Assembly: GCF_026571515.1 (NCBI RefSeq)
Contig: NW_026852123.1
Location: 372,001-436,000, forward strand
Source of the DNA: Ruditapes philippinarum
Lineage: Eukaryota
Direction of reading: 5' to 3'
DNA length: 64,000 nt
Positions within the stretch are counted from its first letter, which is position 1. The number at the start of each line of letters is the position of its first letter. Made by a program: the position numbers and the translations under genes. Below the pieces are notes generated by a model. That model made no database searches and was not told where the DNA came from. It saw only the letters and a list, made by a program, of their open reading frames with translations. Positions 3,047-57,592 of this stretch are shown in pieces.

Positions 3047-4078
3047 ATGGGTGAAGTCGATCTAGTGAACCGAGATCCAAATAATATCAACAATCATTTA
3101 ACAGTAAGTTTTCGTCTTATAAAACTGTTAAATATGCTTCTTTTGATTATTTATAACAATACCATTATTTCTTTCTTTCTTGTTTAAAGCAAATTAGAAG
3201 GTTAAACATGACATTAACTTAAACGATTACATTTACTGATAATCAAAGACATAGATTTCAACTAACATAATATTGCCTTTAGTCTTTCAACTTTTACATC
3301 AGTTTCAACAATTTTGATATCATTGCAAGTATCACAATCCTTTGAATATTTATTGTTCATTGTTTTTTGTTTTTTTAAAAAGCATTTTAACTATGTTTTA
3401 TTTTTTAATTTTCTCATCTCGTTATTTTAAGATCTTTTTATTGGTTCAAATATTTTAACAAGAACTGTATGCCATATCTCGACTTCTTATGATAAGCACA
3501 TTATTAATATTACAAGCAAACTTGTATGTTTTTTATATTGTTAAAAATTTGTTTTATCAAATGCCGTCATAAGATAAAGAAAAGTATCTTTAGCTAACCA
3601 TTCTTTCTTTGTTTCTTATAAAGTATCTGCCTTCATGTTTGTATTTTGTTATGTGTTTTATAAATATTATTATTGTTGTTGTTGCCTTTTTGTTCTATTT
3701 CATTTTATTGATTTATTTACTCTTGATATACGACATACTTTTTTTTAACAGTGCCAGTTTGAAGATGTATTGGCCGAGCCTGATGGCACACACAGTATTG
3801 ACTGTGTTTGGAAACTCTCCTACAGCTGTTTCAACCTGTGGAAGAAGATATGCTATATAGTCTTTACCACGTTGTGCGGGATCTGTATTGCTGCTGAGTG
3901 GGGATGCGAATTTGCGGCAGTCTCTTTCTGGCACATCTGGGCATTCACACCTCTCTTCAAGATGTTTGACCTCAACTGTAGTTGTTTGAAGAAACTATGG
4001 GCACAATGTGTCAACTGCTGCGTTGAACCGTGCTGCATGGCTTGCGGAACCGTGTTCCATATGTTCAAGAAAGCTTAA
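3047..4078 (+). CDS. cav: Caveolin-like protein copy 1, 127 aa; exons 3047-3103 and 3752-4078
   Basis: Exon 1 MGEVDLVNRDPNNINNHLT then GTAAGT donor. Acceptor ttttttaacag. Exon 2 CQFEDVLAEPDGTHSIDCVW...CCVEPCCMACGTVFHMFKKA*. Matches the CAV1 DLVNRDP segment and FEDVIAEP signature. An alternative in-frame acceptor lies 6 nt downstream. Confidence 0.93.
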
Positions 4079-7055
4079 TTTCTGACAAATTGTAAAAAAA
4101 CTTTTGAATTTTGTTAATGTCAGTATTGTTGGCAACTTATGATGCGACTATGACTTTTTGTCAGTTTGCAGATATTTCTAGGAGAATGATATTATACTTT
4201 GACGACATATTTTGGTTTAATTCGTTTGATTCAATTTGAAGTTTTCAAAAAGGATTCATACTGGATGGGAATGAAATGTGTCGGCTTTATCTTAATATCT
4301 TTGTTGTTCTCTGTTATCTTTCATTAAATTTGGTTAAAAGTGTTTGTTATCTTTAATTAAATTTGGTTAAAATTCTTTGTTTATGTTATTATTTCTTTTA
4401 AAAGGTAATTTTGGGTGAGCTTCGGTTTGGCCGGAAGATAAGTGCTTGCTGTTTTTGTTAACACATGTGCAATGGAAAAAATACAATTCTTCGACAGACT
4501 ACTGTTAATTCTTTATGGGAACAAAGAACATTATAAAATAATTATTTCGTTTATCGTGCATAAACAATTAGTCATTATTTCAGTCATAATCATTTTAGCC
4601 CGATACTTGTAGGATAAACATCCTGAATAAGATATCATCATAACATTAGCTCTGACACTTCTTCTTCGGTCAGGTGAGAATTGATTGTCCTAAATATGCA
4701 ACAGTTTGTCGTTGTAAATCGTATTGTTAACCATCTGCCTTTGAACAGTTACCTTATTGTAAAGCATGAGCGTATAGTGCAAAATATGATAAACACGATC
4801 AACAAGGAAAGGCGGACTAAGTTCAATGAACGCAACCCCCACACGACCCAGCAACAAGGACCAGCGTCAATTAGCTCAAGAGGACCCCAAACAAAACAGG
4901 ATTACTTAAGCAGTCATGTACATTATTCAGCAGCTTATATAAACTAAGACGGAAAACATAAACGACACAGTGCATATTACATAACACTTCTTCTATCAGT
5001 GATATATGAAAAGGCATAGATACCGCACACATATGTCGACTTTCAAGTGAACCAAATGTGGTATTTCAATATCGTTAACATAAAACAATTTAATAGTTAG
5101 TGTCTTTTCAACTTTTCAATACTGTCGAGTAGAATAAGAACATTTCATCATTTTGAATCACCTGATAAGGTGCCATATTATCTTTTTTATCCTTTAAAGC
5201 CAATTTAGTGAATGACCGTTAAGACTGTACTATCCTTTAATAAGCAAAAAACAAGAAACAATGAAATGATTTTTTTTTCAAGAATTTTATTTTTTCTCAA
5301 ACGATAGATATATAAAAACATGAACATAAAACGTGAATATAAAATGAAAGAAAACAAAAAAGTAATAATGTTTTCTAGATAAACATCATATTTTGTATAC
5401 TTTTAAATATAATACTTATATTACAAATATCAATTTTGAAAACAAAGTGATTTCTATTAACAAAGCGTCATTTGTTATCCTCAAAGTGATATTGAATCTA
5501 ATGTTCTTTTCAGACTACTACGAATACCATCTCATACAATTAAGAAACATTTAAAAACTTTATACCAAGAAAAGAATTACCATGCGTAGAGACACACTCT
5601 CAATCAAACAGATAACCAAAATAGTCACTAACAGCCCGTTACAGCGCTTGTTTCTCCATTTTATTTTTATATACTAAAATGCAAGAATATATCTTTCTAA
5701 TTCGTATCAAAAATACAATTGTTCTTTTAATATCAGATATTTATTTTAGTGACAAACTTTGTTTTGCATGAGAAGAGCAGACAAAAAAATCAGATAATAT
5801 CCTATATGAACAAAAAACGAAAAAAACACAGTGCATAGTTAGTCAAATTTCTTTCGATTCTGTTTATCATGAGATGTTTGAAAATGCAGCAATAGAAAAG
5901 GCACAATTTGTGTCGAGCTTAAAGTGAGTTATAAAAATTCTGATGTATTTGTAAAAACAGTGAGCTTTATATTATGTTTTCCAAATGTGAGTTAAAAATT
6001 TGATAGCTGATATTGAAAATATATTATGACACAGTGTCTCGGTTCATTACTTTGAAAATCAATATAACATTAAACATAACTTCTGCAGACAATTTCAAAA
6101 ATGCTGTGCTGAATACAACTATAATCTAGCTTTAATTTGTAAGATATTTATCAAAAACAATGTGTAAAAGATAATTTAAAAAACATTATCTCAAAAGAAA
6201 GATATATAAAATAAATGATATAATTTATGTAAATACGTTTCTGGACGGATATATGACAGATCACTAAATGTGAATATCACAGAATCGCTTTTTTCAAACA
6301 TGTTCATTTTTTACCGTTCTTATTGCATTTTATTAAGAACTTAAGATACGCAACAGTGAACTTATCTTACCAATCTCGTTATTATCTTATGTATAGTCAG
6401 TAAGTTAACATATCCATTGCATAATATCATAACACGCTTTACTGCTCATAAGTGATTACCACACATTCGATATCAACATGTTTCCTTTATCATTTATAAT
6501 CATTAACAAGAAGAAAAAAAACATTAACGAGGTTTAAAAATTTATTACTGTATTTATTAAATATCACTAAATTTTGTAAAATATCAATACAACACATTGT
6601 CCTTTATTCCACTTAATGTGTCAAACATCAAATAAGACCATTTCTTATCAAAGATTTCTGTAAAACACAAAGTTGACTTTTATTACACACATGTACAAAT
6701 AAACACCGCATTAAAAATGTTCACAATTTGAAAAAAAAAGTCAATGGCACATGTCTAACTTCAACAGTTCATGGTCATCTTTATATCGGTATATTCAATG
6801 CTATTCCGAGATATTCCAGGTATTAACAAGGAAAGCACTATTTAAATCATGCAACTGAAATAATAATGACTTTGTCGTTTTGCTATCAGGTTTTTTTTTT
6901 AATATTCCAGTATAACAAATCCTTGATCTTCGAATGTCATTGAGCTTAAGTAGAATAAAGATATTCCTCCTTTAAAAGAGAAGAGGTGATATTTTCTGTC
7001 CAAAGAAAATAAGAATGGTGAAGGAGGTTTTAAGGAAGTTCTAATACTCTTTAAC

Positions 7056-8747
7056 TTACTGCTTCTTAAAAGCATTGAATACTTGTCCACAGGCTTCACA
7101 ACATGGTTCGATGCAACATCCACAAATGGTTTCGTGTATTCTCTTCAATATACTGCAATTAAGCTCGAGCATGCGCAAACACGGAGTGACGGCCCATACA
7201 TGATTAAAGGCTACACCTGCAAACTCACAACCCCAGCTGGCGGCTATACAAATACCGCAGCAGAGAGTGCTGAGCTTGTAACACAAACTCAACCAAAGGG
7301 TAAAGCATTTGTGCGAGAGCTTCCACACGCAATCCATACTATGAACACCTTCTGGTTCTGCGAGCACATCTTCGAAACAGACCTGAAAACAAATTTATAG
7401 ATAGAATGTTTTATCAGTTTAACCATGTTGAACCAACTTAAAATATTTTTGTTTAGATATTGAAGGACATGAGTGATAATATGGAAGGCCAAATTATATT
7501 TTGTGCTACCAATCATGCTCTTTTTGGTTGGTTTAGTAAAGAAAATATACTGTCATGTTCTTTTGTTGTTCATTTTTTTTAATTTAGATAGAATGACTTT
7601 GTCATTTCATACAAATAAAATGTGTCAATTAAATAACATCAATGATGAAAATGGTTTCCTCAGCACATAAACCTAACGATATATTTTCACCTATTTTATT
7701 ACTTTCTGAAATACATAAAATAAGGTTTATTGTTAATTTATTATCTATCGTACTTGCTCTTTTTCAAAGACAACACAAAAGTGCTTTTTTAAAGCTGGGT
7801 ACTATAAGCATGAAAGATAATGATTGAAATACATATATTTTAGAAACAAACGACTCAAATGTTTTAACTTTAGTGTATTCTATTCTATCGGCAACTGATG
7901 ATGTCAGCATATGCGACCAGTAGAGTCTAAGATAATATCTGGGAAATCCGTGCCGACTGATCATGCCCTGAACATTTCGCTATTCAGTAGTTCGTACTGT
8001 AAAATTTCCTCTAAAAGTTTTGAAAAGTTGGGCAAGTCAAATTAATATATTTAGCGTGGAAAGGGTTTAAGTACTTGACGAAAACGTTTGTGAATAACAA
8101 ATGTACTTTTAGTTTAGTGTATAATATTTTATTTTAGTTCGATTGTGTTGGAAGCTATAAGCTTGTTGAAACACTCTCTCTCTCGAATCCGTTCCTGGGC
8201 CCAACCAGAACTTAGCAACGAGTGTAAGGTTATTTGCTAATGAAAACCATGGCTTTTCCCTGACAACGGTTTGAACCCTCTGTGCCAGCAGTCCTTAGAT
8301 AATTAGTCCGACGAAATAGTCACTTGGCCACACCGCCACTCGTAAATGTAGTTTTTAGCAACGTTGTCGTTTATTTTTAATATTTTAATTTAAATAAAAT
8401 ATAAAATAAAAATAAAATATTTTCACATTCAGATCTAGAAATATATTTTTCGTATCGTTTTTAAAATAGGTTTTAACAAACTGTTTGACCCGTTATTCGC
8501 ATAGCGCATAGATCATGAATATTGATATTAAAATTAAAATTTAATTTAATTTTTTGATTTTTATTTTGAAGAAATGCTTGATTTACAAACGACCATGTAA
8601 GAAGACAAGCAATTTACAATCTATGACACTGTTTATAATTTAATTTAAATGCAATTCTATAAAAAATGAAAATTCTTATAAATATATTACCTTTATATGG
8701 TCGTTAATGTTATTAGGGTCTCTGTTAATCAAGTCTACGTCACCCAT
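7056..8747 (-). CDS. cav: Caveolin-like protein copy 2, 127 aa; exons 8747-8691 and 7382-7056
   Basis: Exon 1 MGDVDLINRDPNNINDHIK|GTAAT. Acceptor ttttcag. Exon 2 VCFEDVLAEPEGVHSMDCVW...GQVFNAFKKQ*. Confidence 0.93.
8108..8340 (-). mobile_element. tRNA-derived SINE (family A) in the intron of copy 2
   Basis: Reverse-complement copy of 16372-16590, including the GGTTCAAACC B box, GGAACGGATTCGAGAG and AGCTTCCAACACAATCGAAC. Confidence 0.7.
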
Positions 8748-11277: not shown

Positions 11278-12168
11278 CTACTTCTTTTCAAACATATGGA
11301 AAATTTTCCCGCAGGCAAAACAGCATGGTTCGATGCAACATTGGCATATGGTCTCGTGCAATCTCTTGAAAACGCTGCAGTTGATCTGGAACATGTGCAA
11401 ACAAGGTGTGATAAACCATACATGGTAGAAAGCAACCTCTGCAAACTCACATCCCCAACTTGCGGCTATACAAATACCACAACACAGTGTGCTGAGCTTG
11501 TAACATAAACCGAGCCAGCAGTTGAAGCACGTGTATGACAGCTTCCAAACGCAGTCGAAACTGTGAGCATTTTCGGGTTCTCCGAGAACGTCTTCAAAAG
11601 AAACCTGAGATATAAAAATTATAAATATGTAATGTATAGTAAAAATGGCGAAGTAAAAAGATGTTCACAAGTGCCTAAAAGCCATAAATGCTTATGACAT
11701 GACTTTCATGCCCCCACTTGCGAGTATATTTTAGCCCTTGTCCACCCCTCAGTCCCGCTGCTGTGCTGTCCCGCCGTCCGGTTGTCCAACTGTCAGACTG
11801 TCCGTCTATAGACTGACAATACAGTGAATGTTTCGGTCACCCGTGTCCGATGAACACATTTCTAAGTCAATATAAAATTGTACTGTGACAAAACAAACGT
11901 TTACATTGCGGACAGTAAACTGTAGGTAAGGAAGTGCGAAATAAGACATTGTGCAAAATTTATTATTTGAAATGATATATATATAAAATACAATTAATTC
12001 AGGAATCATTGTGATCTGTAGGTCATTCTTTTAAATTAACTGAATGTCTACACTGATAACCCAGGAGTATTTTTTAAACCGCAAAAGGGAAATAAAAAAT
12101 GTTTCACTCACATTATGAGAATGCAAAATGAAACTTGTTGTTTGTTTGTTTGTTTTGTTTTTTTTTTT

Positions 12169-12209
<41 letters not shown>

Positions 12210-13208
12210 GGGGGGGTGTTTCGTTTTTATTGTATTCCATATATTCATTCCATTTTGTCTGTAAGTATATTAAAACTTTAATGTTCTGAACACCGAAGCT
12301 TTAACAGTATAGTAAAGTATTACAATATCAATACCAGTGATAAAACATTACATTGCAATTTCAATAGCACAATGTAACAATCACTTTTATTTGCTATCTG
12401 TTGATGTAAATTGATTTTAGAATCAATACACTATTCCGGATAAATAATTAAGTCATTTATATTAAAGCACATGGATTTAAAACAGTTACGCTTTGGTATG
12501 TTGAAAATTGAGAAGTTAAATCTTTCAACAAAATATTGTGAAAATAAAATGTTCAACAAAAAAACGTGATTAATATCTTCAAAATATTTTTACAATTTGT
12601 GGAGAGATCTATTTATACGTAATGCTCAGTCTAACATTGAAAACATTTGGTCTTATAAAAAATTCTGGAAACAAAGTGATCCCTCGGAAGCATTAATGAC
12701 AACAAAATAACATAAGAATTGCAGACTCGGTTTGATTGAGTCTGTACATGAGAGATAACGAATAAGTGCAACATCCCTTTCGCCCCCTAGCACCGGCTTG
12801 AGCGGTACTCAATTCTCAACGCTTAATAGTGTTGACATCAAAGGTTATTTGAAAAAAATTTAAATAAAAAAAGACAAATAAATTCAATAAAAAATCTTAT
12901 ATAAAGAAAAAAAAATTTTGTTCTTGTTTTGATTTTTCTGTCGGGATGTCAATTCCCTAGTGTGTCAAATTATTTCTACAAATGTTTTGTAAAAGCTAAT
13001 TATTCAAGACGTAACACCGCTTTTCTATGACACAAAACTGCAAAACCTGTTGTAGCGGTTGATAATTTTTAGGACACTATTTATAATGTTTCTGATAAAA
13101 TGTAACAAAGACTTCAATCAAATAATAAAAAACATATATTCAAAAGCATTTTACCTTAAGTGACCCATTAATGTCGTTTGGATCTCGGTTTACTAAATCC
13201 ACTGTCAT
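11278..13208 (-). CDS. cav: Caveolin-like protein copy 3, 126 aa; exons 13208-13155 and 11604-11278
   Basis: Exon 1 MTVDLVNRDPNDINGSLK|GTAAA. Exon 2 translated by hand (absent from the ORF track): VSFEDVLGEPENAHSFDCVWKLSYTCFNCWLGLCYKLSTLCCGICIAASWGCEFAEVAFYHVWFITPCLHMFQINCSVFKRLHETICQCCIEPCCFACGKIFHMFEKK*. Confidence 0.93.
12137..12217. repeat. (TTTG)n / poly-T tract followed by a G run
   Basis: Directly visible; lies in the intron of copy 3. Confidence 0.9.
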
Positions 13209-18229: not shown

Positions 18230-20104
18230 TTACTTCTTTTCAAACATATGGAAAATTTTCCCGCAGGCGAAACAGCATGGTTCTATGCAACATTGGCATA
18301 TGGTCTCGTGCAATCTCTTGAAAACACTGCAGTTGATCTGGAACATGTGCAAACAAGGTGTGATAAACCATACATGGTAGAAAGCGACCTCTGCGAACTC
18401 ACATCCCCAACTTGCTGCTATACAAATACCACAGCACAGTGTGCTAAGCTTGTAACATAAACCGAGCCAAAGGTTGAAGCACGTGTATGACAGCTTCCAT
18501 ACGCAATCAATACTGTGAGCATTTTCGGGTTCTCCTATAACATCTTCAAAACAGACCTGGAATAAATCAGACGTATTAGTGAAAAATATTCATTTTATTG
18601 CAATGATGCAATGGCATGTTTTGGAACCACAATAACAATTTGATAATTTTAATTTTGCGCAGCCGATAACATAAAGAATAACGTTTTCTGCATTGGACTG
18701 ATGATTTTGTGTAATGTATTTGTCCTCTTTGAATTTGGAACAGTACTTTCAAAGTAAGAGGATTTTAATAGCAAAATGCAAAACCAAAGTTTTAAACAGA
18801 ATCGTGTATGGTCAGATTGCGCGGATGCACTGACTTGCCTTGCCATTGGTGACAAAACTAATCACTTTTGGTTGATAGGTTAAGAGTTATTTACTTCGAC
18901 TGTTGAATGTGTCGCCCTTCGATTCATAAAAACACATCTGTCTGAATATGAACATCAAAATATAATGCTAGTGTTGATGTCTTATGCATGTTCATGTATC
19001 ACTAAAACTAGTCGCGATATCACTAATATCTTGAATCTTAAGAATAGTAACTTACTAATTTATTGTTTCTTTCTTAGAAGATATTTACGTCATCTAATAA
19101 TTTTAGAGTGCGCAATATAAAACATGTATCCATTTTTAAAAAACATTTAGGAACCATATAAACATTTGTTGACCATGTTTCATTAGTTTCAGTAATTCAT
19201 TTGCTTATTTTGAATTGACTTATTGCGCATTTTACTTCCAGAAATTAGAGTTATCACGTTAGAAATATAGTCTTTATGCGGATATTTCCGTGAGCTTTCG
19301 GCAATATAGATATATTCTTTTGATTGAGCTTTATGAAGAAAGTTGTTCATTCAAGATATATTTACATTAAAAAGAGATTTGTTTTATGTCTTGAATGCTT
19401 AATGTAAATGTACCTTTTTGTAACATTTACATCTGTTCTGCAGAATATAAAATCCAAGCCTGCAGAACGAGGAATTCAATACATTCCGAGGATTTCTGCA
19501 GATATAAATTCAAGGGGAAAGGTGCATTAGTGCTATTCTTGCATAAACATATTTTCTTCGTTTATGTACAAACTTGCATGCGAATTTTCATGAAAGATTA
19601 AAATTTTTTTAGTTTGTAACAATTAGAATATAACAAACAAAATCATTCAAAGAAAATTTTGTCGCAATTGTTTATATGACAAGTGTGTGTGCGTTGTGAT
19701 AACTTTTGAACATTTATTTTTGTTGCTGTGGTAACAAAATTTTATTTTTTGAATTTTAAAAATTAAAAAAAAAAAAAAAATCTAAATCTTGTTTGCTTTT
19801 GCTTGTTTCGGCATTATTTGATTATGAAGATTGAATGTTCATAAGGTTTTTTATGTTTAAAAAAGCGAATTATTTCTTTTATTTATTCATTCATATTTTA
19901 ATTATATATATTTATCTTGATTATTTTAATTTAAACATTATTTTATTTAGATATTTATGAACGCATCTTTGTTACCTTTACTTAGGAGATTTGATTGTTC
20001 TGGAAAAAAACTCAAGAGATATCATTCCTTAATTAAAAAAAAGTGTTAACCTTTAATCCTGCATTAAGATCATTGGGATCTCTCTGTTCTAAATCCACTG
20101 CCAT
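18230..20104 (-). CDS. cav: Caveolin-like protein copy 4, 126 aa; exons 20104-20051 and 18556-18230
   Basis: Exon 1 MAVDLEQRDPNDLNAGLK|GTTAAC. Exon 2 VCFEDVIGEPENAHSIDCVWKLSYTCFNLW...GKIFHMFEKK*, open, 327 nt. Confidence 0.92.
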
Positions 20105-22090: not shown

Positions 22091-25000
22091 TCAATTTTTC
22101 CCCAAATGCTTGAAAACGGTTCCGAACGCTTCACAGCATGGCTCAAGACAACATCCACAGATGGTTTCATGAATTTTCTTCAGTACGGAACAGTTGATCT
22201 CTAGCATGCGGAGAAATGGGGTTATGAACCAAATATGGTAAAACGCTGTCTCGGCAAACTCACACGCCCACTCGGCAGCGATACAGATGCCAAAGCAAAG
22301 GGTACTGATTTTGTATGTGAGGCCCAGCCAGCACGTAAAGCACGTGTATGATAATTTCCAGACACAGTCTAAACTATGAACGCCGTCAGGTTCTGCTAAA
22401 ACATCCTCAAAAGCAACCTGAAAATAAAAAAAAAGTTATACTTTATAGTGTTTCAATAAAAAATCTATGCAGCCAAAAGTTTTCGACACCATTATCATTA
22501 TCATAATGATTAACAACAACATCATTATTATCAACATTATTATTCCTTATGATGAATACAATATTCCATGCAGTCAATGATTAGCACTTTTCATCATCAT
22601 CATTATCATCATTAACATCATCGTCATTATCAACAACAATAATAATTATCAACAGCAATAATAATATAATCATCAACAACATTTTATATTTTCATAATGA
22701 ATAAAATGTTCCATACAATCAATAGAATGTAGTTTTTATCATCATCGTCATCATTAGCATCATCATCATCAACATAAATAACATTATCATCATCAACAAC
22801 AACATCATCATCTCCATCATCAACAACAACAACATTATCATCATCAATAACAACAACAACATTGTCATTCTTTATAATTATTTAAATGTTGCGTGCAGTC
22901 ATAGTAACCAGTTTTCATCATCATTATTATCATCATAATCATCAGCAGGAGCATCATCATTATCATCAACATCATCATCATCGTATTCATCAAAAACAAC
23001 AACAACATAATTATTGCTACTAAGACTAACATCGTTATTGAAGCATATCTGAATATATACATTGCTGAAGCCAATTATATTTATAGAGTTTGACATATAT
23101 CAACAAAATGATTCAGCATTAATATGTGTTCATGCATTCAATAATTCTTCGTTTATCTAATATATAATTATCTAATTCTGTCATATTAATGATAGTATAT
23201 TGTTAAAACACCGACCTCTTTTAAGGTCAATAATAACTTATGCAAGCAGCTTAAGTGAAAACCAATAACTTATAGGAAAACATGTATTACTATCGTCGCA
23301 CGGGACGATTCGTGCTTATCTTAATTGCCTATCTCTGTGAATGTACGTGAAACTCGTGCAATATTAATGAGGTTTTTCCTCTTTACCTAGCTACATTGTA
23401 AACAAAGGTAAACATTGTAAACAATGCGTCCCCAGAGCCTGGTAAAATTCAATACGCGTTACTTTTACAACTTTCTCTCGTTTTACATAGCCTATTTGGG
23501 AAAAGAGTATTACTTTTTAAGTTCAACTGAACATTTCCGACCATGTTTTAATGACCATGTAGTAAAAGTTGCTAGTAAATGGCAGATATTGATTTAGTCT
23601 GTAATGAACTAAATTTAAGAAAACGATAAGTTCTGTCTCTTTTTGCAAATGATACAGTATATCATGAAAAAGTTTTCATTATACCCCTTAGATTATGCGG
23701 CATGGCAGTGTAATATAATATGATTACGAATTAAATAAGGTAAAAATCAAACTCGTAATGTTTTTATCTTAAAAAGCAATAATGGCAAAAGCTATCATAT
23801 CTATTTTATTTGAGATTAATCCTTTACATTTCTTGTAGAATGGCAAGAACTATCCTTTACATTTTATTTTTCGAATGACCAATGAAATTCCCAGATTTCA
23901 ATTTGTAATTTAAAATGACAAATGAAACTTCTTCTTAAAAAATGATTTTAGATGGCCTACGGCTAAAAAAATCCTTCATACAAATTGCATTTATAAAAAT
24001 ATGAATATTCAGAATAAATGGCAAACAATATCATACTTAAGTCCGATGAATTATTGATCTATCGATCCTATCAAACTTTTATATATAGTTAATGATGGTA
24101 TATTGTCAATAGCTCAAAATATTTTATATCTTGGAAATTGCGATACCAAACATGCGTTCTGGTTAGGTTTCGATGTTAAAGTATCATGTTACAATCGATG
24201 ACATGGCACAGTTTTGTTTTCAACTATACCAGATAGATTGGAGAATCAATAATTTGTTAGCAGAACGCGTGTTTACTTGATGACGCTTATCATTAACGGT
24301 TAGTTCTAATAAAAAAACCTTTATAATTTAAAAAACGTTATATTTAATTGCGTAAAATGGTTATTTTCGATTAAATGTCCATTATGCCCCAGAATGCTTT
24401 CATTTTCATTTCTCGTAAGCTTTTTATTTTTGTGCCAATGTTATAGTTATTATATTTGCCCTTTTCTAAAGGGTGAAAAAAAATCAATTCTAAGGCATAA
24501 TGTTCCTTTTTTGGATACCAAAAGGTACGGAAGAGTATACTGACCCCCCTTATATATTTTATATGCCTGTTTAAAATACGACGATACATGATAACAACAT
24601 TGTTCGTCATGGTTTTTTAAAAGTTATATATATATAGTTCATATTGATCTTTTCTGTTTTTTGGCTACTATACTGTTAAAAAAACGTATTATAAACTTAA
24701 GTCTTTCTTAAGACCTTACTTTTATTTATAATAAATATGTTTTTTCTTCTTTTCATTGAAATTCTACCTCAAGAAGCAGACGTTTTCTTCGAGTAAACGC
24801 TTTTATTTATTTGAAAACAGTATGTTTTCGAGGCATTATTTGTTTGACAGATATAGAGATGATATAATCATATATAATATATATATTCTTAACCTGAGTT
24901 TTTAGCTTAGATGATGTTTTATATGTTTCGTAAAATAAGTTGATCGTTATGATAACACGCTTGCGGTACACGAGTATTATATAAAAGATTATAATTTGTC

Positions 25001-26327
25001 TGATATATATTATAATTATATAAATGGTATTAAAACTTTGAGTAACTTATACTATAAATATTTCTTACACCTTTTTCAATAATTATACATGTTGTTTTTA
25101 TATCAAAACGAGAAAAGGGCCATTTAATATTACAATAATAGATGATACCAAGAGAATCTAATTTAATTTATAAATTCATACATCTTTTTTCATGAGAATT
25201 ATATGATAAAGGCTAAATTGTACAACTTCTGTATGTTAAGAAGAACGTTCTGTTCTCTTAAATTTCCAAATATCATCGAAGAAACAATGCATATTTGTGA
25301 TTTATGGTGTATAATAACAGATAAAACTCTGCAAGATCTACTTTAGATATCATATAACTTGTCATTTTTTAAAGATATGTATTATACAAAGGTTTTTTTT
25401 CTTGAAGGCATAAAAAATATATAAGGGGGTCAGTATACTCTTCCGTAAAAAGATATTTCGAACAATCATTAAGACTATGTTATCTTCACCTTATTGCTCT
25501 TTTAGTTTTAATGTTTCTAAAATAAGCAAGTTAATTCAAATTATCCACAGTCTTCATAATAATGAAACTGTCTGCCTTGTGTTTTAAGGTAAATCCAAAG
25601 ATAAATTTACTATTTTGGAGGTACATTAACGTTTAGAAATGAATATATTGTTTTCTTCTTTAGAAAGTGCAAATATGCGTTTTATACTCTTTTGATAATT
25701 TATTTAGATAATTTTGGCGGGTAAGAAGCGCTGAATGTACAACAATTCGTCATAAAAGTAGTCATATGTAAATAAGTATTATTTTGACTTCCATACAAAA
25801 AAAAACAAAATTACGATATCTTTACTAAAATTCAAAAATGAAAAAAAAAACAAAAGATGGTTCGGCTATATGATCAATAGGTAACATTTTTGGAAAGTGT
25901 TAAGGACACCAAAAATAAGAAGAAAGTTATTGTGAAATAACTGCAATGTCATATTTTTGGCTTTGAAAACTTTGTTTTTCAATATAAGATAGAAAATTTT
26001 CTTTTTTCTTCTCAAAACGAGTAGTGTATCTATTCATTATAATTTCTAAATAAGTACATTTTTCTAAAATATATATATAACAGAAAAATATATAATTCAA
26101 TAATGTATTCTTCCTTACGACTAAAAATTGAAATGTTTCTTAAATTCTAACACATTCTATGATATTTTTTGAAAAACTATAATATAAAAGTGTAATGACT
26201 GCTGCTTTTTTTCAATGATAATGATAAAAATTGTACATGCATGTCGAAATTAAAAAACTGCAGGATTTACCTTTAAATGATCGTTAATGTTGTTTGGATC
26301 CCTGTTAACAACGTCCACTGTGTCCAT
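22091..26327 (-). CDS. cav: Caveolin-like protein copy 5, 127 aa; exons 26327-26271 and 22417-22091
   Basis: Exon 1 MDTVDVVNRDPNNINDHLK|GTAAAT. Exon 2 VAFEDVLAEPDGVHSLDCVWKLSYTCFTCWLGLTYKISTLCFGICIAAEWACEFAETAFYHIWFITPFLRMLEINCSVLKKIHETICGCCLEPCCEAFGTVFKHLGKN*. Intron 3853 nt. Confidence 0.92.
22490..23010. repeat. Degenerate (ATC/AAC)n trinucleotide region in the intron of copy 5
   Basis: Runs of CATCAT/CAACAA. Confidence 0.85.
23785..23960. repeat. Short ~33-bp degenerate tandem repeat, related to 34480-34645
   Basis: ACTATCCTTTACATTTTATTT...AATG[AG]C units at both loci. Confidence 0.6.
24526..25447. mobile_element. Non-autonomous TIR element, 922 bp, TAC..GTA ends (IS3EU-like)
   Basis: TIR TACGGAAGAGTATACTGACCCCCTTATATATTTT at both ends. 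Flanks AAAAGG/AAAAGA (5 of 6 TSD match). Confidence 0.75.
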
Positions 26328-26784: not shown

Positions 26785-26919
26785 NNNNNNNNNNNNNNNN
26801 NNNNNNNNNNNNNNNNNNNNNNNNNNNNNNNNNNNNNNNNNNNNNNNNNNNNNNNNNNNNNNNNNNNNNNNNNNNNNNNNNNNNNNNNNNNNNNNNNNNN
26901 NNNNNNNNNNNNNNNNNNN
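26785..26919. other. Assembly gap (135 N)
   Basis: Run of n. Confidence 0.99.
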
Positions 26920-28523: not shown

Positions 28524-31205
28524 CTAACGCTTCTCGAACGCTGAAAATATTTTCCCACATGCTAAACAGCACGGCTCCAGACAGCAGGCACATATCGTCT
28601 GATGACACTTCTTGAAAACCTCGCAGTTGATTTCCATCAACCGCAATGAAGGTGTTATAAACCAGATATGGTAGAAGGCAACTTCGGCGAACTCGCACGC
28701 CCATTCGGCGGCCAAGCAAATACCACAGCACAGTGTGCTGAGCTTGTAACACACGCCAAGCCAGAAGTTGAAGCACGAGAACGACAGCTTCCACACGCAG
28801 TCAATACTACGAACACCGTCAGGTTCCGCGAGAATATCTTCAAAGGCAACCTGTAAATGAAAGAGACCTTCTCTATTATATGTATTATCATAACACTTAA
28901 GTTGTTAAAGACAAGACATACAATTACAAAAAAAAAAACAAGTTGAACTCAGGATTTGCCCCTTTAACTTATTTTTTTTTTCGCACTTTATAAAATGTTT
29001 TCCAAATACTGCGTTTGCAGCGTTTGTTCCAATAGAATTTTTTTTAATTCCCTTGTAACAAAACATCGAAAACAAAGTGTGCTCTAGCTAGCTTGTTTTT
29101 TTTTTTTTCGACACCGTTAAAAATCCAAATCAAATCCATATTGTATCCCATCAAGCCTCGTTTTCGTTCTCCGGGTCTAAAAGATCCTTATAAAATCTAT
29201 ATAGTTCTCAAAGAACTAAAGTTCTGTGAAAATGTTAAAAATTGGTGGTGTGAAATGATGAAAACATTATACTAGTACATTGTTTAATACAAAACTGTTT
29301 CTATTGGACTCGTACACAGGTGCTAAAAATCTATATTGGACGTCGTACTTTAAAGGTTTGACGGCTGTTTTCTCGTCCAATTGAATTAAGTATTGAACTC
29401 AACAATGTATATTCATTTCACAATATTACAAATGTCGAATTAAATCGTATGTAGGTTGTTTATGGAAATAAAATGTATCTGTGTTCAACATCTTTTCCTT
29501 GTGTGTACATTGGTCAATATATTTTTAATGACATACAAAATATTCTTTATACACGTTGAATATTTTTAACTCAACTTTTTATCGTAATTGACTTCTTTGA
29601 AAGAGGCTGTTTTTATATTCGTTTTTTTTTCCTTTTTTATTAATAATTGTCCTGGATTCATACAAATAGACGGGTACACTAATCGATTAAAAACTCATCA
29701 TTGGTAAAAAGGTAAGAGAATTTCTACAAAGAGCGTATCCTAGTTATGTTTAAGTACAACATCCTGGAAATGTCGTCTGCATGAACAACGCTGAATATGT
29801 ATTGGAAAATCATTAACGAAAGAAAAAAATAAAGGCAAAAGATAATTAGTAGATGGGATGGGCAGTTATCCTTAGAATTGAACTTCCTGCAGTGGTAACT
29901 TCCCTTGTTCAGTACAAAACAGCTTCAAACTTTGCTTGATTAGCTTAGAAAGATATACTATTTCAATTTCATTGTATAGCAAGCTTCATTTAGGCACCGT
30001 TCGATTATCTCAATAGGTAGAGCGTTTGACTGTGAATCGGGCGATCCGGGTTCGATTCCCGGACGGTGCAGGTCACTTTCGTTGTGATTGATCATGAAAT
30101 CCTTTCTACGGTCATTCGCAATGTATATCTGCTCTGGCATGTAAAGAAGTTATCAGTTCTTTGCGAAAGTGAAGGCAACTAGTTCAGGAACGATGCGGTG
30201 GCTGAACTATGCTCTGGTTAATTCAATGTGTCTTTCTGCCACGATCGATCCGGAGTGAAAACTACCAACACCACCGCCAAGTACTTCATTCACAACTTAA
30301 TCGCAGTTGGGCTAGATTCTTGTGCCTGCTATAGGCTCAGTCGTGGCGAGTGTTCAACATAAATGAGAATTTGAATAGAAATGAATATACAAAATAGAAT
30401 ATGGATATTTAAATAAAAAACACAGAATTTGCTTTGTATGTATAAATAAATAGACAAGGAAAGCTAATAAACATGTACAAATGATAAAACAAGCACAGAA
30501 ATATGTATGTATGATAATCTAGACAAAACAAATTTAAAAATATGTATGTTTAATTGACTAGACTAAGCAAAGAGATATGAATATATCAGTGACTTGACGA
30601 GACAAACAAAGAAATGTGTATGTATAAATGACTTGATGGAACATGCACAGAAATATGTATGTATAAATGACTTGACGGGACAAGCACGTATGTATAAATG
30701 ACTTGACAAGACAAGCATAGAGATTTGTATGTATAAATGACTAGGCAAAACAAGCATAGAGATTTGTATTTATAAATGACTGGACAAAACAAGCATATAG
30801 ATTTGTATGTATAAATGACAAAAACAAGCATAGAGATTTGTATGTATAAATGACAAAAACAAGCATAGAGATTTGTATGTATAAATGACTAGACAAAACA
30901 AGCATAGATATTTGTACATGTATGTTTAAATGACAAGAACAAGCATAGAGATTTGTATGTATAAATGACTACACAAAACAAGCATAGAGATGTGTATGTA
31001 TAAATGACTAGACAAAACAAGCATAGAAATTTGTATGTATAAATGACTAGACAAAACAAGCATAGAGATTTATACATGACTTGAGAGAACAAACATAGAA
31101 ATATGTACATACATGTATATGTATAAATGACACAGGTAATATACAAACCTTTAAGTGGTCGTTCAGATTATTCGGATCTCTGTTCATTAAGTCAAGATCC
31201 GACAT
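28524..31205 (-). CDS. cav: Caveolin-like protein copy 6, 127 aa; exons 31205-31149 and 28850-28524
   Basis: Exon 1 MSDLDLMNRDPNNLNDHLK|GTTTGT. Acceptor tttacag. Exon 2 VAFEDILAEPDGVRSIDCVW...GKIFSAFEKR*. Confidence 0.92.
29994..30278 (+). mobile_element. tRNA-derived SINE (family B) with a tRNA-His(GTG)-like head, in the intron of copy 6
   Basis: Cloverleaf-like 29994-30070: GCACCGT/ACGGTGC stem, CTGTGAA loop, CCGGG-TTCGATT-CCCGG arm. Followed by a body shared with 538-760. Confidence 0.7.
30425..31132. repeat. 39-bp minisatellite abutting the exon-1 donor of copy 6
   Basis: Unit ATGACTAGACAAAACAAGCATAGAGATTTGTATGTATAA, roughly 18 copies, more degenerate toward the left. Confidence 0.9.
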
Positions 31206-40485: not shown

Positions 40486-42012
40486 CTATTTCTTGAAATG
40501 GACAAAGAGGGCACCGCAAGCTTCACAACATGGCTCCAAGCAGCAGCTCATACAGGTCTTGGTAACCTTGGTGAACACAGCACAGTTGATCTCGCACATT
40601 CTCAAGATTGGTGTGATGTACCAAATATGATAGAAAGCAATCGAAGCAAATTCGCAACCCCACTCGGCGGCAATACAGATTCCGTAGAAGAGGGTCAAAA
40701 GTTTGTAGCAAACACCGAGCCAAAGATTGAAGCAGGTGTAAGACAGCTTCCAGACGCAGTCGATACTGTGAGCACCCTCGGGTTCAGCCAAGACATCTTC
40801 AAATTGGACCTGAAAAATAAGACGGAATGCTTGAATAAGAAGAAAAAGTAAATGTGAGGTAATCACAGGAAGGTTTTTTTTACCGCATTCTATACAGGGA
40901 TAAAATTTAAGATGTGTATTTGAATATTCATGGGTCGACGCAACAGATAAAGTGTGTCTAAACAGGAAAACATGAACATGTATATCAATCTTAGAAAATG
41001 TCTCGAGTTCACAAAACGCTCTTGTATTTTTATGTCCTAGCTAATACCGTGGGAAATGTAGATAAATATTTGAAGAAGAACCCGGGGAATAAAATGAACT
41101 GCTAGAATTTTGAAACTTTGCATTTTTTACATTATAATCAAAAATTCTAAAAAAGTAAAAGATGCTAATTTAGTGTTTGTACACGAATGGAAAAAGAAGA
41201 ATTTTAAAAGCATTGGTTAGGAATCCTGTTTTTATTATCTTAACTTATTTTTTACAAAGTAATGGAGTGCATACTTTAAACGCACGTTTGTGACAGTTTG
41301 AAAGAAAAAAAAATTATCATTTTTTAGAAACTTTTCGTAATTCTGAATTTAACTTTGAAAGAATCAATGCAGGCATTGATTGAGCTCAAAATCTGATCAG
41401 TTGAAGAACAAGCATGGAGGACTTGTTTATCTAATATACATGTCTAGAGTAAATATTATTACTTATATTCTAAAACATTTATTTCTAAAAACCGTCGTCC
41501 TGGTTTCTCCCGGATTTTTCTCTTAAGGTGTGACAATTTATCGAAAATACTAATACAAATATTGTGATCAACATAATATTAAAAAAATAAAAAGACATAT
41601 AATATAGTCTTTTGCAGTATTTTTCAACAATCCACTGCTTGTTTGTAAACTTGTATTTTAACACGTGCATTTCGTGCAGTAATGTAAGATTAACTATATT
41701 TTCATGAGAAAAAATGGAATTTGGGAATAAACCGGTTTTTTTTTAAACATTGCTTTGTCTGATTCAAGTTAAATTTGAATTTAGAAAAATAACTTAGGAA
41801 ACAATCTGTACTAGATACAAATCATTGCATTATTTAAAATTTTGCTTTATGATAAATTACATTTCAATTAATTTTGCAATTTTAATTCATTATCTATTTA
41901 TTTTTCTATTTTATTTTCGCAGAAAATGTATTTATATAAGAATATGTAGACATCTTACCTTGATATGTTGATTAAGACCGTTGGGATCTCTGTTGACAAG
42001 ATCTACTTCCAT
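40486..42012 (-). CDS. cav: Caveolin-like protein copy 7, 125 aa; exons 42012-41959 and 40809-40486
   Basis: Exon 1 MEVDLVNRDPNGLNQHIK|GTAAGA, with an in-frame TAA 9 nt upstream of the ATG. Exon 2 VQFEDVLAEPEGAHSIDCVW...GALFVHFKK*. Confidence 0.94.
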
Positions 42013-46363: not shown

Positions 46364-47777
46364 ATGGAAGTAGATCTTGTCAACAGGGATCCCAACGGTC
46401 TTAATGACCATATTAAGGTAAGATATTTTGATATATTTCGATAATTAACTAAAGTTTATTTTATTATTTTGAAATATTTTGAAAATTATGCCTGGGTTCC
46501 GAATGAAAACATTTGATTTGATTATAAGGTACATGAAGTTTTACAGATTTAAAACAATATTGACATAAAGTTAAATCCGCACGCTTCCAGATGAGCAAAA
46601 TGTATCTTCAAAAAACAAACTTAAGAAAAAGGGGAAAAAAGTTTTAGAAATGTATAAATATTCACCATTCACGCAAACTCTTGAATGTACTATAAAAAAT
46701 ATGCCAGAATATACTTTTTTCACTAAGTTTCTATCCTGGTCTAACGGAGTTAGATAACTTTCCACAAATATATGTATTTCTACAAATTATAACTAATTTC
46801 TGTGGATAATAAGCTGCAAAGACTATGAAGACATTTTCTTTATAGATATGCATTTATTGAAATCTAGGAAATTCTTACTTAATTTATCTAATTTGAATAA
46901 AAGGACGCACAAACTATGTTGGGAAACCTGCATTCCCTATTACTGGTCAAGTTAACTTAGTATTTTCTTTAAAAATGCCAGTTTTTTATTGACACTATGT
47001 AGTCATTCTGTTTGCAGTGTTTGAAACATTACATATTTTTTCTGTGTTTACTTGAAAGTTAATTACATTTTACATTTAAAAAGAGTCTCTACAACAATTT
47101 TAAAGTTAAAGCGAATAGTAATTTGTATAAAGTACAGTCAAATTATAAATAAAAAAGTATACATGTATTTCAATAAACTTATCTCTTTATTACAAAGAAA
47201 TTTGACAAAAATGTTGTCGATCTGTATTTTAAACTTTGACAAAATTGATCTTTGTTATGTGAACTGGCGTGTCGCCTTTTGTACATTTATGTCGTGTAAC
47301 CAAAATTGTAAAAGAATAGAACATTTCTATGACAGTATACACGTCATTTATGACACAATTTTATTAAAATTTTGCTTTCAAACATTCTATTATTTGTCAT
47401 AAATATCAAACATTTAAACCTGTTTTTCAATATTATCTTTTTACTTATTTCAGGTCCAATTCGAAGATGTATTGGCTGAACCCGAGGGAGCCCGTAGTAT
47501 CGACTGCGTCTGGAAGCTGTCTTACACCTGTTTCAATCTTTGGCTCGGTATTTGCTACAAACTTTTGACCCTCTGCTACGGAATCTGTATTGCCGCCGAG
47601 TGGGGTTGCGAATTCGCTTCCATCGCTTTCTACCATGTCTGGTACATCACACCAATCTTGAGAATGTGCGAGATCAACTGTGCTGTGTTCACCAAGGTTA
47701 CCAAGACCTGCATGAGCTGTTGTTTGGAGCCATGTTGTGAAGCTTGTGGTGCTCTCTTTGTTCATTTCAAGAAATAG
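46364..47777 (+). CDS. cav: Caveolin-like protein copy 8, 125 aa; exons 46364-46417 and 47454-47777
   Basis: Exon 1 MEVDLVNRDPNGLNDHIK|GTAAGA. Exon 2 VQFEDVLAEPEGARSIDCVW...GALFVHFKK*. AATAAA at 48069. Confidence 0.94.
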
Positions 47778-55635: not shown

Positions 55636-56036
55636 CGTCCTGAAAACAGATTATGACCAACCGTTTAAGGAACTATTCTTTCTCCCCTGGAATGAGTTTG
55701 TTTCGTTGTTGTTCTTATTGAGGTCGTGTTTACTTCTGTGTTTTGTCATTACTATAATTACACATTTTCATTTTTTTTTTCAATGGCATTAAGCTGAGAT
55801 TATATATATATTTTTTTATTAATAATTTATTTCTATAAAAAATCCCAGTTATTTGTAGAATTCATAACGCAAAGTGACATGAACCAAGTGTGAAAAATAT
55901 TCTTTAATCTTTGGCGATTTTAAATCAGACATGTCGGTTTCGCCATGCTCTTTAATGTATTGTTAAATCATTGTCCACTCAGATTGTCCATTGATTGAAA
56001 TCGAATTACAATTTATGACAAGTTTCTACCTATTCG

Positions 56037-56050
56037 GTGTCCGTGGATAC
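56037..56050. promoter_or_regulatory. X-box-like 14-mer upstream of copy 9
   Basis: GTGTCCGTGGATAC, 121 bp from the ATG. Confidence 0.45.
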
Positions 56051-56170
56051 CTATCTGAAAAACATTGGCAATAAAAAGCCGTCCAAGGCCATGCTAGAAT
56101 CAAACCACTTCCAGGCTTCGGTCCTTGCACTTCTATCTGGATTGTTACCTTCAGCAATAACTAATTAATC

Positions 56171-57592
56171 ATGGAAGTAGATCTTGTCAACAGGGATCCC
56201 AACGGTCTTAATGACCATATTAAGGTTAGATATTTTGATATATTTAGATAATTTGTAATGTTTTAGATTATTTTGTAATAGCTGAAAATGTAAAAAAATA
56301 CAAAGGTTCCGAATGAAAGCATAATCAAAGATCGGTTATTAAGTACATGCATTTTACAGATTGAAAATATTTGATATTTGGTTAAAGCAGCAATACATTA
56401 AAATGTATCTTAAAAAAAAACTTAAGAAGAAGAAAAAAAGTTTTGAAAATGAATAAATATTCACTATTCAGGTGAAATTTTAAATGTATTATGCAAAATA
56501 TGTCAGAAATTACATTTTTTTAAAATAAAAATCTACTTTGGATAACTTTCTACATACATGTATTTCAACAAATTGTAACTAATTTCTGTGGATAATAAGT
56601 TGCGAAGGCTAATCTATACACTTGAAGACATTTGCCCAATAAATATGCTCATTTTTGGGGTAAAAAACTTTTATTGCACACATTTATTGAAATTTAGGAA
56701 ATTTTTACAGATTTTTTCTAATTTGAATTAATGAACGCACAAACTATATTTGGTGAGCCATTATCTATTACTGGTCAAGTTAACTTAGTCTTTTTGTTAA
56801 AAATGCCAGCTATTTAATGACACTATGTAGTGATTCTGTGTTTACATATAGTGTGCAGAGTTTGAAAACATAACATATATTTTTTTCTGTGTTTGCTAAA
56901 AAGATGATTGCATTTTACATTTAAAAATAGACTTTGAATCAATTTTGCAAAAAATAAGTTAAAGTGATTTAGTAATTTGTTTAAGTCAGTCAAAATACCA
57001 CTGTGTTTTATGTTTGGCTGCATTTATGTCGATCTATATTTCAAATTTTGATAAAATTGATCTATGTCATGTGCATTGGCGTGTCGCCTTTTGTTTATTT
57101 ATGATGTAGTTTAACCAAAACTGTAAAAGAATGGAATATTTCTATGATGATATACACGTCATTTATGACACAATTTTATTAAAAAATTGCTTTCAAACAT
57201 TCAGTTATTTTTCATAAATATCAAACATTTAAACCTTTTTTTCAATATTACCTTTTTACTTATTTCAGGTCCAGTTCGAAGATGTCTTGGCTGAACCCGA
57301 GGGAGCCCGTAGTATCGACTGCGTCTGGAAGCTGTCTTACACCTGTTTCAATCTTTGGCTCGGTGTTTGCTACAAACTTTTGACCCTCTTCTACGGAATC
57401 TGTATTGCCGCCGAGTGGGGTTGCGAATTCGCCTCCATTGCTTTCTACCATATTTGGTACATCACTCCGATACTGAGAGTTTGCGAGATCAATTGTGCTG
57501 TGTTCACCAAGGTTACCAAGACCTGCATGAGCTGTTGTTTGGAGCCATGTTGTGAAGCGTGCGGTTCCCTGTTTATCCATTTCAAGAAATAA
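56171..57592 (+). CDS. cav: Caveolin-like protein copy 9, 125 aa; exons 56171-56224 and 57269-57592
   Basis: Exon 1 MEVDLVNRDPNGLNDHIK|GTTAGA. Exon 2 VQFEDVLAEPEGARSIDCVW...GSLFIHFKK*. AATAAA at 57882. Confidence 0.94.

What the first reader, a model, noticed from the sequence alone, without database searches (positions are those of the whole stretch)
3047..57592. Tandem array of nine intact, minimal caveolin genes
Seen: nine two-exon genes in 55 kb, all with open frames, GT-AG phase-0 introns at the same codon and a purine at -3 of the ATG; none looks pseudogenised. Known: mammals have three caveolins, and the intron sits where CAV1/CAV3 have theirs (..K|xDFEDV). Inference: a lineage-specific expansion under purifying selection, giving a diversified set of membrane-scaffold subunits that could hetero-oligomerise. 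The tiny first exons make the locus easy to mis-annotate. I cannot tell from the sequence whether such a cluster has already been described.
Basis: partly seen in the sequence, partly recalled or inferred. Interest (0 to 1): 0.85.

Follow-up and report, generated by a model that had tools for sequence, protein, structure and literature searches.

The report
Clam caveolin gene array, already annotated
The window really holds nine intact two-exon caveolin genes, but they are the middle third of a 31-copy caveolin array in the Manila clam that RefSeq already annotates, and other bivalves carry similar arrays.

Summary
The window holds nine two-exon caveolin genes (PF01146, E 1e-22 to 1e-26) encoding 125-127 aa. 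All have GT..AG phase-0 introns at the same codon and a purine at -3. The N gap lies between genes, 458 bp upstream of the fifth gene's ATG.

The nine are part of something larger and already annotated.
- The window is positions 372001-436000 of an 802,382-bp Ruditapes philippinarum scaffold.
- That scaffold carries 31 caveolin core exons (29 intact) over about 150 kb.
- RefSeq proteins named caveolin-1-like or caveolin-3-like match my models exactly for six of the nine genes, and for 21 of the 31 loci.
- Unionid mussels have annotated arrays of similar size: at least 22 genes in Sinanodonta and at least 14 in Potamilus.

Purifying selection is supported: dN/dS is 0.04-0.09 in the young pairs, and exons are 93-100% identical against 80% for the intron.

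"Lineage-specific" is only partly right. The three subfamilies in the window are shared with Dreissena, Mya, Mactra, Mercenaria and unionids.

The intron matches the CAV1 codon 65/66 boundary.

Read-level RNA evidence and hetero-oligomerisation could not be tested.

This scan had already noted the left part of the same array in the neighbouring window (s1-812921).

The parts
3047..3103 (+). c1 exon 1 (19 codons, ATG to donor GTAAGT)
   Evidence: Exact prefix of RefSeq XP_060595836.1 (P0238).
3752..4078 (+). c1 exon 2 with stop (caveolin core, subfamily A)
   Evidence: PF01146 E 1.4e-26. Exact suffix of P0238.
8691..8747 (-). c2 exon 1
   Evidence: Exact prefix of XP_060595850.1 (P0025).
7056..7382 (-). 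c2 exon 2 with stop (subfamily B)
   Evidence: PF01146 E 1.3e-25. Exact suffix of P0025. The full protein aligns to human CAV1 residues 48-168, E 4.7e-29.
13155..13208 (-). c3 exon 1
   Evidence: No exact database protein retrieved.
11278..11604 (-). c3 exon 2 with stop (subfamily B)
   Evidence: PF01146 E 2.7e-24. 94% nt identity to c4 exon 2 while the flanks are at random level.
20051..20104 (-). c4 exon 1 (weak donor GTTAAC; Q replaces N in the NRDP motif)
18230..18556 (-). c4 exon 2 with stop (subfamily B)
   Evidence: PF01146 E 4.1e-24.
26271..26327 (-). c5 exon 1
   Evidence: Exact prefix of XP_060595579.1 (P0018).
22091..22417 (-). c5 exon 2 with stop (subfamily B; 3853-nt intron)
   Evidence: PF01146 E 5.7e-23. 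Exact suffix of P0018.
26785..26919 (.). Assembly gap (135 N) in the c5-c6 intergenic spacer, 458 bp upstream of the c5 ATG
   Evidence: The flanks share a motif of about 60 nt. The gap was not filled or looked up.
31149..31205 (-). c6 exon 1 (donor GTTTGT)
   Evidence: Exact prefix of XP_060595592.1 (P0021).
28524..28850 (-). c6 exon 2 with stop (subfamily B)
   Evidence: PF01146 E 1.5e-22. Exact suffix of P0021.
41959..42012 (-). c7 exon 1
   Evidence: Exact prefix of XP_060595608.1 (P0217).
40486..40809 (-). c7 exon 2 with stop (subfamily C)
   Evidence: PF01146 E 2.8e-25. Aligns to CAV1 residues 66-169. Exact suffix of P0217.
46364..46417 (+). c8 exon 1
   Evidence: Identical in nucleotides to c9 exon 1.
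47454..47777 (+). c8 exon 2 with stop (subfamily C)
   Evidence: PF01146 E 1.5e-23. Lies in a 2.9-kb duplicated unit, 45845-48667 against 55653-58479, 83% identical.
56171..56224 (+). c9 exon 1 (donor GTTAGA)
   Evidence: Exact prefix of XP_060595628.1 (P0214).
57269..57592 (+). c9 exon 2 with stop (subfamily C)
   Evidence: PF01146 E 9e-24. Exact suffix of P0214. A 98.3% identical haplotig copy sits on contig C159.

Best explanation
The nine genes are loci 19-27 of a 31-locus caveolin array. Twenty-nine of its core exons are intact and two are broken. The array spans about 154 kb (about 303.9-457.5 kb) of one 802,382-bp scaffold of the Manila clam Ruditapes philippinarum. It also contains one cysteine-poor, CAV1-like canonical caveolin.

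Each window gene encodes a 125-127-aa caveolin. It starts at the position of human CAV1 residue 48 (pin motif) and ends at about residue 172-173. [quoted passage not shown] Its core exon holds 12-16 cysteines.

The array grew by local segmental duplication in both orientations. Three old subfamilies, shared with other heteroconch bivalves, were each re-duplicated later. At least some exon 2 copies may have been homogenised by gene conversion. The copies are kept by purifying selection.

By homology the products are monotopic proteins of the cytoplasmic membrane leaflet that assemble into caveolin-type oligomeric discs. That step is inferred, not shown.
For: Gene models and family:
- Gene models.
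- Pfam PF01146 matches all nine core exons.

Location and array size:
- The window is G000:C610:372001-436000, with 31 core-exon loci on C610.
- RefSeq proteins equal exon 1 plus exon 2 of c1, c2, c5, c6, c7 and c9, and of 21 of the 31 loci.

Selection and duplication:
- dN/dS is 0.04-0.09 with dS about 0.3 for the young pairs.
- c8 and c9 lie in a 2.9-kb duplicated unit that is 83% identical. Their intron is 80% identical against 93-100% for the exons.
- An allelic haplotig is 98.3% identical, so 83% identity means paralogy.
- Trees place the three subfamilies with Dreissena, Mya, Mactra, Mercenaria and unionid sisters.

Homology to CAV1:
- c2 aligns to 7SC0 residues 48-168, E 4.7e-29.
- Exon 2 starts at CAV1 residue 66.
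- CAV1 coding exons are 30+165+342 bp (PMC5896723).
- The AF2 protomer model is two long helices with no strand.
Against: - No read-level RNA evidence.
- For c3, c4 and c8, no matching database protein was retrieved. The cluster lists were truncated, so this is not evidence that they are absent.
- c4 and c9 have T at donor position +3, and c4 exon 1 has diverged (72% nt identity to c3).
- Disc assembly and membrane behaviour are inferred only.
- The gap at 26785-26919 means that linkage of the two halves of the window rests on scaffolding.
Confidence: 0.9

Rival explanations
1. The copies are assembly artefacts, that is, uncollapsed haplotypes or falsely duplicated segments placed side by side.
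For: The assembly does contain haplotigs. Contig C159 is 98.3% identical over 3.3 kb to the c9 region, and RefSeq lists two accessions for the identical protein. There is also a scaffold gap inside the cluster.
Against: - The closest pair in the window (c8/c9) is only 83% identical over 2.9 kb, and 80% in the intron. That is far below the 98.3% allelic level.
- All other pairs have saturated dS or unalignable flanks.
- Every copy has its own distinct exon 1 and intron length.
Confidence: 0.02
2. The apparent young, species-specific duplicates are older paralogues whose core exon was homogenised by gene conversion (concerted evolution). If so, the expansion is older than it looks.
For: - c3 and c4 are 94% identical across exon 2. 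The similarity stops within a few bases of the exon ends (343-bp hit).
- Their exon 1 is only 72% identical. Their intron and flanks are at the shuffled-control level, 46-50% against 48%.
- c7 against c8/c9 shows the same pattern: exons 92-94% identical, intron 47-49%.
- In the trees each species' subfamily C copies tend to group together, on very short branches.
Against: - dS of 0.3-0.4 within exon 2 is not zero.
- About 370 bp around exon 1 of c7 and c8 still align at 76%, as expected for plain divergence with indel or transposon turnover in the introns.
- c8 and c9 are a straightforward segmental duplicate.
- No formal conversion test was run.
Confidence: 0.3
3. Some of the nine, most plausibly c4 and c9, are silent or decaying copies despite their open frames.
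For: - Weak donors with T at +3: c4 GTTAAC and c9 GTTAGA.
- c4 exon 1 has 6 of 18 residues changed relative to c3, including the N of NRDP.
- Two loci elsewhere in the array are clearly broken: g02 by a stop and g16 by a frameshift.
- No transcript evidence could be obtained.
Against: - dN/dS is 0.04-0.09 for exactly these pairs.
- c6 has a GTT donor too, and a RefSeq model uses it.
- c9 has an exact RefSeq protein.
Confidence: 0.15
4. This is a purely lineage-specific (Ruditapes or venerid) burst from a single ancestral gene.
For: c2-c6 form one clade with a single Mactra sister. The seven subfamily C copies are very close to one another.
Against: - Subfamily A (c1) groups with Dreissena, Mya and unionid proteins (97/85* and 96*).
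- Subfamily C contains Mactra, Dreissena, Mya and Mercenaria proteins (99/96*).
- Left-hand array members pair one-to-one with Mercenaria, Dreissena and Mya proteins.
- Unionids carry annotated arrays of at least 22 and at least 14 genes.
Confidence: 0.05

Closest known systems
Human caveolin-1 (PDB 7SC0) and the vertebrate CAV1/CAV3 genes
   Same: - PF01146 domain and FEDV.AEP signature.
- The sequence aligns from the pin motif through the spoke region: CAV1 48-168 for c2 at E 4.7e-29, and 66-169 for c7.
- The same phase-0 intron lies before residue 66.
- CAV3 is also a two-exon gene.
   Different: - No N-terminal residues 1-47.
- The protein ends at about residue 172-173, so most of the beta-barrel strand is missing.
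- 12-16 cysteines in the core exon, against 7 in the clam's own canonical copy.
- 31 loci against three genes.
RefSeq 'caveolin-1-like' and 'caveolin-3-like' proteins of Ruditapes philippinarum (XP_060595579.1, XP_060595592.1, XP_060595608.1, XP_060595628.1, XP_060595836.1, XP_060595850.1)
   Same: They are identical, residue for residue, to my two-exon models of c5, c6, c7, c9, c1 and c2. They sit on a contig of the same length, 802,382 bp.
   Different: Nothing differs for these six. For c3, c4 and c8 no record was retrieved, but the member lists were truncated.
Annotated caveolin arrays of unionid mussels (Sinanodonta woodiana ACJMK2_016417-016445; Potamilus streckersoni CHS0354_038405-038428)
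   Same: They encode short caveolins of 126-131 aa from runs of neighbouring locus tags on one chromosome or scaffold. At least 22 proteins were retrieved for Sinanodonta and at least 14 for Potamilus. They fall in the same subfamilies in the tree.
   Different: They belong to a different bivalve subclass. I could not inspect their gene order, spacing or exon structure. They are deposited as 'hypothetical protein'.
Small caveolin paralogue sets in other invertebrates (Ciona Cav-a/Cav-b/CavY; Aplysia '8 caveolins')
   Same: Several paralogues, some on one chromosome, with two- or three-exon genes (PMC7383883; PMC9334734).
   Different: The clam array is several times larger and is dominated by the cysteine-rich minimal form.

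Membership tests
Caveolin (Pfam PF01146) | Match to the family HMM above the gathering score | tested here: met
   All nine core exons score 80.5-93.5 bits against a cut-off of 25, covering profile positions 29/30-127/129 of 133.
Caveolin (Pfam PF01146) | Caveolin signature motif FEDVIAEP | tested here: met
   FEDV(L/I)(A/G)EP stands at the start of exon 2 in all nine genes. The motif is named in PMC7383883.
Caveolin (Pfam PF01146) | Homology through the hook, scaffolding and spoke regions of human CAV1 | tested here: met
   phmmer against 7SC0: c2 aligns to residues 48-168 (E 4.7e-29) and c7 exon 2 to residues 66-169 (E 2.5e-20), without gaps after residue 66.
Type II caveolins (Han et al. 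2025, PMC12330381) | Pin motif N-terminal to the hook, found only in Type II-CAV | tested here: met
   Exon 1 (..DL.NRDPN..N..) aligns to CAV1 residues 48-65. This is met by sequence only. The AF2 protomer has low confidence in this stretch.
Type II caveolins (Han et al. 2025, PMC12330381) | C-terminal beta-strand that builds the central barrel of the disc | tested here: not met
   The proteins end 3-5 residues after the position of CAV1 S168. The AF2 model shows helices 35-93 and 95-121 and no strand. The paper notes that strands are absent in some clades, so this does not exclude family membership.
CAV1/CAV3-type gene structure | Phase-0 intron immediately before the residue equivalent to CAV1 I66 | tested here: met
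   Exon 2 residue 1 aligns to CAV1 residue 66. CAV1 coding exons of 30+165+342 bp put the boundary after codon 65. All nine clam introns are phase 0. The CAV3 boundary after codon 38 is from my own knowledge and was not tested.
Caveolin (functional definition) | Assembly into oligomeric membrane discs, or formation of caveolae | not testable with these tools
   This needs expression and electron microscopy. No computational result obtained here bears on it.
Expressed protein-coding gene | Spliced transcripts across the predicted junction | not tested
The only indirect support is that six RefSeq gene models are identical to mine.

The most novel reading that the evidence does not exclude
Bivalves may have evolved a functionally distinct class of caveolin. 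It is minimal (CAV1 48-172 equivalent), has a truncated beta-strand and is hyper-rich in cysteine. It has been amplified to about 30 genes in a single array next to the canonical gene. The paralogues might build combinatorial or heavily S-acylated membrane discs, for example for uptake of particles, pathogens or symbionts. The genes are annotated, but I found no paper in the searched library that describes this class or these arrays.
Probability: 0.3. Interest if true: 0.6.

Novelty: already known. Interest (0 to 1): 0.33.

Why it matters
With about 31 loci in the array, plus at least three more intact caveolin-like loci elsewhere in the genome, this is a much larger caveolin repertoire than the three mammalian genes or the eight reported for Aplysia. 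The proteins are natural minimal caveolins. They could help define which structural elements a caveolin disc really needs, such as the pin motif without the N-terminus, or a nearly absent barrel strand.

That value belongs to the bivalve family as a whole. It does not belong to this window as a discovery, because the genes are already in RefSeq and comparable arrays are annotated in other bivalves. What seems to be missing is a published description, not the data.

Tried and rejected
I therefore could not view the public annotation in its genomic context.
It then returned no verdict, score 0.00, and the controls were not run. This is no evidence either way.
- Foldseek of the AF2 protomer (pLDDT 77.5, pTM 0.34) against the PDB found nothing. 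An isolated, extended helical protomer is a poor query, and the sequence match to 7SC0 settles the homology.
- Kirkham et al. 2008 is not held in the library.
- Early on I inferred that c1 and c7-c9 were missing from RefSeq because no representative at 90% identity or more appeared. That was wrong. The clusters are looser than 90%, and opening them showed exact matches.
- Pfam found nothing in three other long ORFs of the window.
- No joined (spliced) sequence was handed to any search tool. Exons were searched one by one by reference, and full-length comparisons used database protein ids or separate prefix and suffix checks. For the same reason I could not look up c3, c4 and c8 as exact spliced proteins.
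- The gap was not filled or looked up.
Full report
**Observation.**
- A tblastn search of the window with its own core-exon peptides finds nine copies and no more.
- All nine match Pfam Caveolin PF01146 at 80-94 bits, with E values from 1e-22 to 1e-26.
- Upstream of each conserved FEDV..EP motif there is a pyrimidine tract and a CAG or TAG-type acceptor.
- A six-frame motif search finds a matching short first exon for each copy on the same strand.
- The final models each have two coding exons, of 54-57 nt and 324-327 nt.
- Introns are 648-3853 nt, always GT..AG, always phase 0, and always at the same codon.
- Position -3 of every ATG is A or G. The products are 125-127 aa.
- Orientation is mixed: c1 is +, c2-c7 are -, c8-c9 are +.
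- Three donors have T at +3 (c4, c6, c9).

**The gap.**
- The 135 N at 26785-26919 lie in the spacer between c5 exon 1 (26271-26327, minus strand) and the c6 stop (28524). That is 458 bp upstream of the c5 ATG.
- No exon or intron is interrupted, so no reading frame depends on the gap.
- The two flanks share a motif of about 60 nt. A local repeat is a plausible cause of the assembly break.
- Continuity, true length and the c5 promoter remain unknown.

**Whose genome, and is the cluster annotated?**
- The best protein hits are RefSeq 'caveolin-1-like' and 'caveolin-3-like' proteins of Ruditapes philippinarum, all on one contig of 802,382 bp.
- The window is G000:C610:372001-436000, and C610 is 802,382 bp long.
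- In scripts I compared exon 1 peptides as prefixes and exon 2 peptides as suffixes, without joining them.
- By that check, database proteins equal my models exactly for six genes:
  - c1: XP_060595836.1
  - c2: XP_060595850.1
  - c5: XP_060595579.1
  - c6: XP_060595592.1
  - c7: XP_060595608.1
  - c9: XP_060595628.1, and also XP_060579628.1 on a haplotig
- This independently confirms the splice sites, including the c1 acceptor and the GTT donors of c6 and c9.
- c3, c4 and c8 were not retrieved, but one relevant cluster list showed only 15 of its 24 members.

**The nine are a slice of a larger array.**
- A six-frame PF01146 search of the whole assembly gives 37 matches. Of these, 32 lie on C610 (two fall in the broken locus g16), giving 31 loci between 309.7 and 456.2 kb.
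- I fetched C610:286001-476000 and rebuilt the models.
- This gives 31 core-exon loci. Twenty-nine are intact. Locus g02 has a premature stop and g16 has a frameshift.
- First exons run from about 303.9 kb to about 457.5 kb.
- The window's genes are g19-g27.
- One member, g14, is cysteine-poor and is the closest to human CAV1: E 7e-35 for its core exon alone, against 2.5e-20 for c7.
- Twenty-one of the 31 loci have an exact RefSeq protein.
- The scan had already noted '18 core-exon copies' in the window to the left (s1-812921). My count for that stretch agrees.

**Real paralogues, not assembly copies.**
- Contig C159 is 98.3% identical over 3.3 kb to the c9 region and is evidently the other haplotype.
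- The closest pair inside the window, c8/c9, is 83% identical over a 2.9-kb unit.
- Broken down, that pair is 100% identical in exon 1, 93% in exon 2, 80% in the intron and 67% upstream.
- Nei-Gojobori estimates on exon 2 give dN/dS of 0.06 for c3/c4 and 0.04-0.09 among c7, c8 and c9, with dS about 0.3-0.4. All other pairs have saturated dS.
- Purifying selection is therefore well supported.

**History.**
- I built a careful tree (65 rows) and a wider quick tree (97 rows). Both rest on only 127 alignment columns.
- They place the window's genes in three subfamilies:
  - Subfamily A is c1 with g15, g17 and g18. It groups with Dreissena, Mya and unionid proteins (97/85*, 96*).
  - Subfamily B is c2-c6. 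Its sister is a Mactra protein (98/91*).
  - Subfamily C is c7-c9 with g28-g31. It includes Mactra, Dreissena, Mya and Mercenaria proteins (99/96*, 97*).
- Array members to the left pair one-to-one with Mercenaria, Dreissena or Mya proteins.
- The subfamilies therefore predate the divergence of these bivalve orders. Only the within-subfamily copies are young.
- There is a caveat. c3 and c4 are 94% identical in exon 2 but 72% in exon 1, and their intron and flanks are at the shuffled-control level. This pattern suggests gene conversion limited to exon 2. If so, it would make copies look younger than they are. This is an inference and was not tested formally.

**Other bivalves.**
- Opening protein clusters shows at least 22 caveolins of Sinanodonta woodiana within locus tags ACJMK2_016417-016445.
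- It also shows at least 14 caveolins of Potamilus streckersoni within CHS0354_038405-038428.
- Many Dreissena, Mercenaria, Mactra and Mya proteins sit on single chromosomes.
- A paper counts '8 caveolins' in Aplysia (PMC9334734).
- Several caveolin-1 genes are reported as enriched in mussel bacteriocytes (PMC7750550).
- The recent survey of caveolin evolution mentions multiple paralogues in Parahoxozoa but no mollusc arrays (PMC12330381).
- Six further full-text searches found no description of a bivalve caveolin array.

**What the proteins are.**
- c2 aligns to human CAV1 (7SC0) residues 48-168, and c7 exon 2 aligns to residues 66-169.
- The proteins thus begin at the pin motif. They keep the signature motif and the hook, scaffolding and spoke regions. 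They stop about three to five residues after the position of S168.
- The AF2 protomer model (pLDDT 77.5) is two long helices with no strand.
- Core exons hold 12-16 cysteines, against 7 in g14.
- Exon 2 begins exactly at the residue aligned to CAV1 residue 66.
- CAV1 coding exons are 30, 165 and 342 bp (PMC5896723), so the intron position and phase are shared.
- That CAV3 has its single intron after codon 38 is from my own knowledge. One search confirms only that CAV3 has two exons.
- Mechanism, by inference from the family: these are monotopic proteins of the cytoplasmic leaflet that pack into oligomeric discs. Whether the truncated strand still allows a closed disc is open. So are mixing of paralogues and S-acylation of the cysteines.

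**Limits.**
- No read-level RNA evidence could be obtained.
- The complex prediction gave no verdict.
- Foldseek gave nothing.

**Verdict.** However, the window shows one third of an array that public annotation already covers, of a kind that is annotated in other bivalves too. The residual interest lies in the undescribed biology of this cysteine-rich minimal caveolin class.

Noticed in passing
G000:C610:355879-356217 (minus strand; locus L001:1492-1827), left of the window: A cysteine-poor, canonical CAV1-like caveolin (g14) sits inside the array of cysteine-rich copies. It has the best Pfam score in the genome (127.6 bits), and its core exon matches 7SC0 at E 7e-35. Its first exon is uncertain.
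   Followed up: partly
G000:C610:311027-311092 (g02) and 364109-364324 (g16): These are the only two broken core exons among the 31. g02 has a premature stop after 21 codons. g16 has a frameshift after about 50 codons, and the rest is detectable in another frame.
   Followed up: partly
G000:C610:367319-371040 (just left of the window): One first exon (367319-367378) is followed by two intact core exons (g17 and g18). RefSeq calls the g17 product 'caveolin-3-like isoform X1' (P0245).
   Followed up: partly
window 11265-11607 against 18217-18559: The c3 and c4 core exons form an island of 93-94% identity that ends at the exon borders. Exon 1 is 72% identical, and the introns and flanks are at random level. 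This may be gene conversion limited to exon 2.
   Followed up: partly
contig G000:C159:16516-19839 (L021): This stretch is 98.3% identical over 3.3 kb to window 55777-59085 (the c9 region). It is an uncollapsed haplotig, and RefSeq carries two accessions for the identical protein.
   Followed up: yes
contigs C7258:79641-79964, C2906:113865-114188, C11784:247580-247837, C13541:115841-116053: Further caveolin-like loci lie off the array: one subfamily C paralogue (92% aa identity to c7), two divergent caveolins (44% and 36% to array members) and one broken copy.
   Followed up: partly
window 35217-36553; 49894-50706 and 51078-51611; 59332-59668 and 60185-60447; 30433-31071: There are large minisatellites between the genes: an 82-nt unit in 16 copies, 22-nt units in two blocks of opposite orientation, and 21-nt units in two blocks of opposite orientation. 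A 39-nt unit in 15.5 copies lies inside the c6 intron. These repeats explain the long spurious ORFs.
   Followed up: no
window, core exons of c1-c9 (for example 7056-7382): The first four cysteines of the c2 core exon after C2 recur every 8 residues (exon 2 positions 18, 26, 34, 42), followed by 45 and 52. This would put them on one face of the long helix. Only c2, c3 and c4 keep a cysteine at the position of CAV1 C133 (my reading).
   Followed up: no
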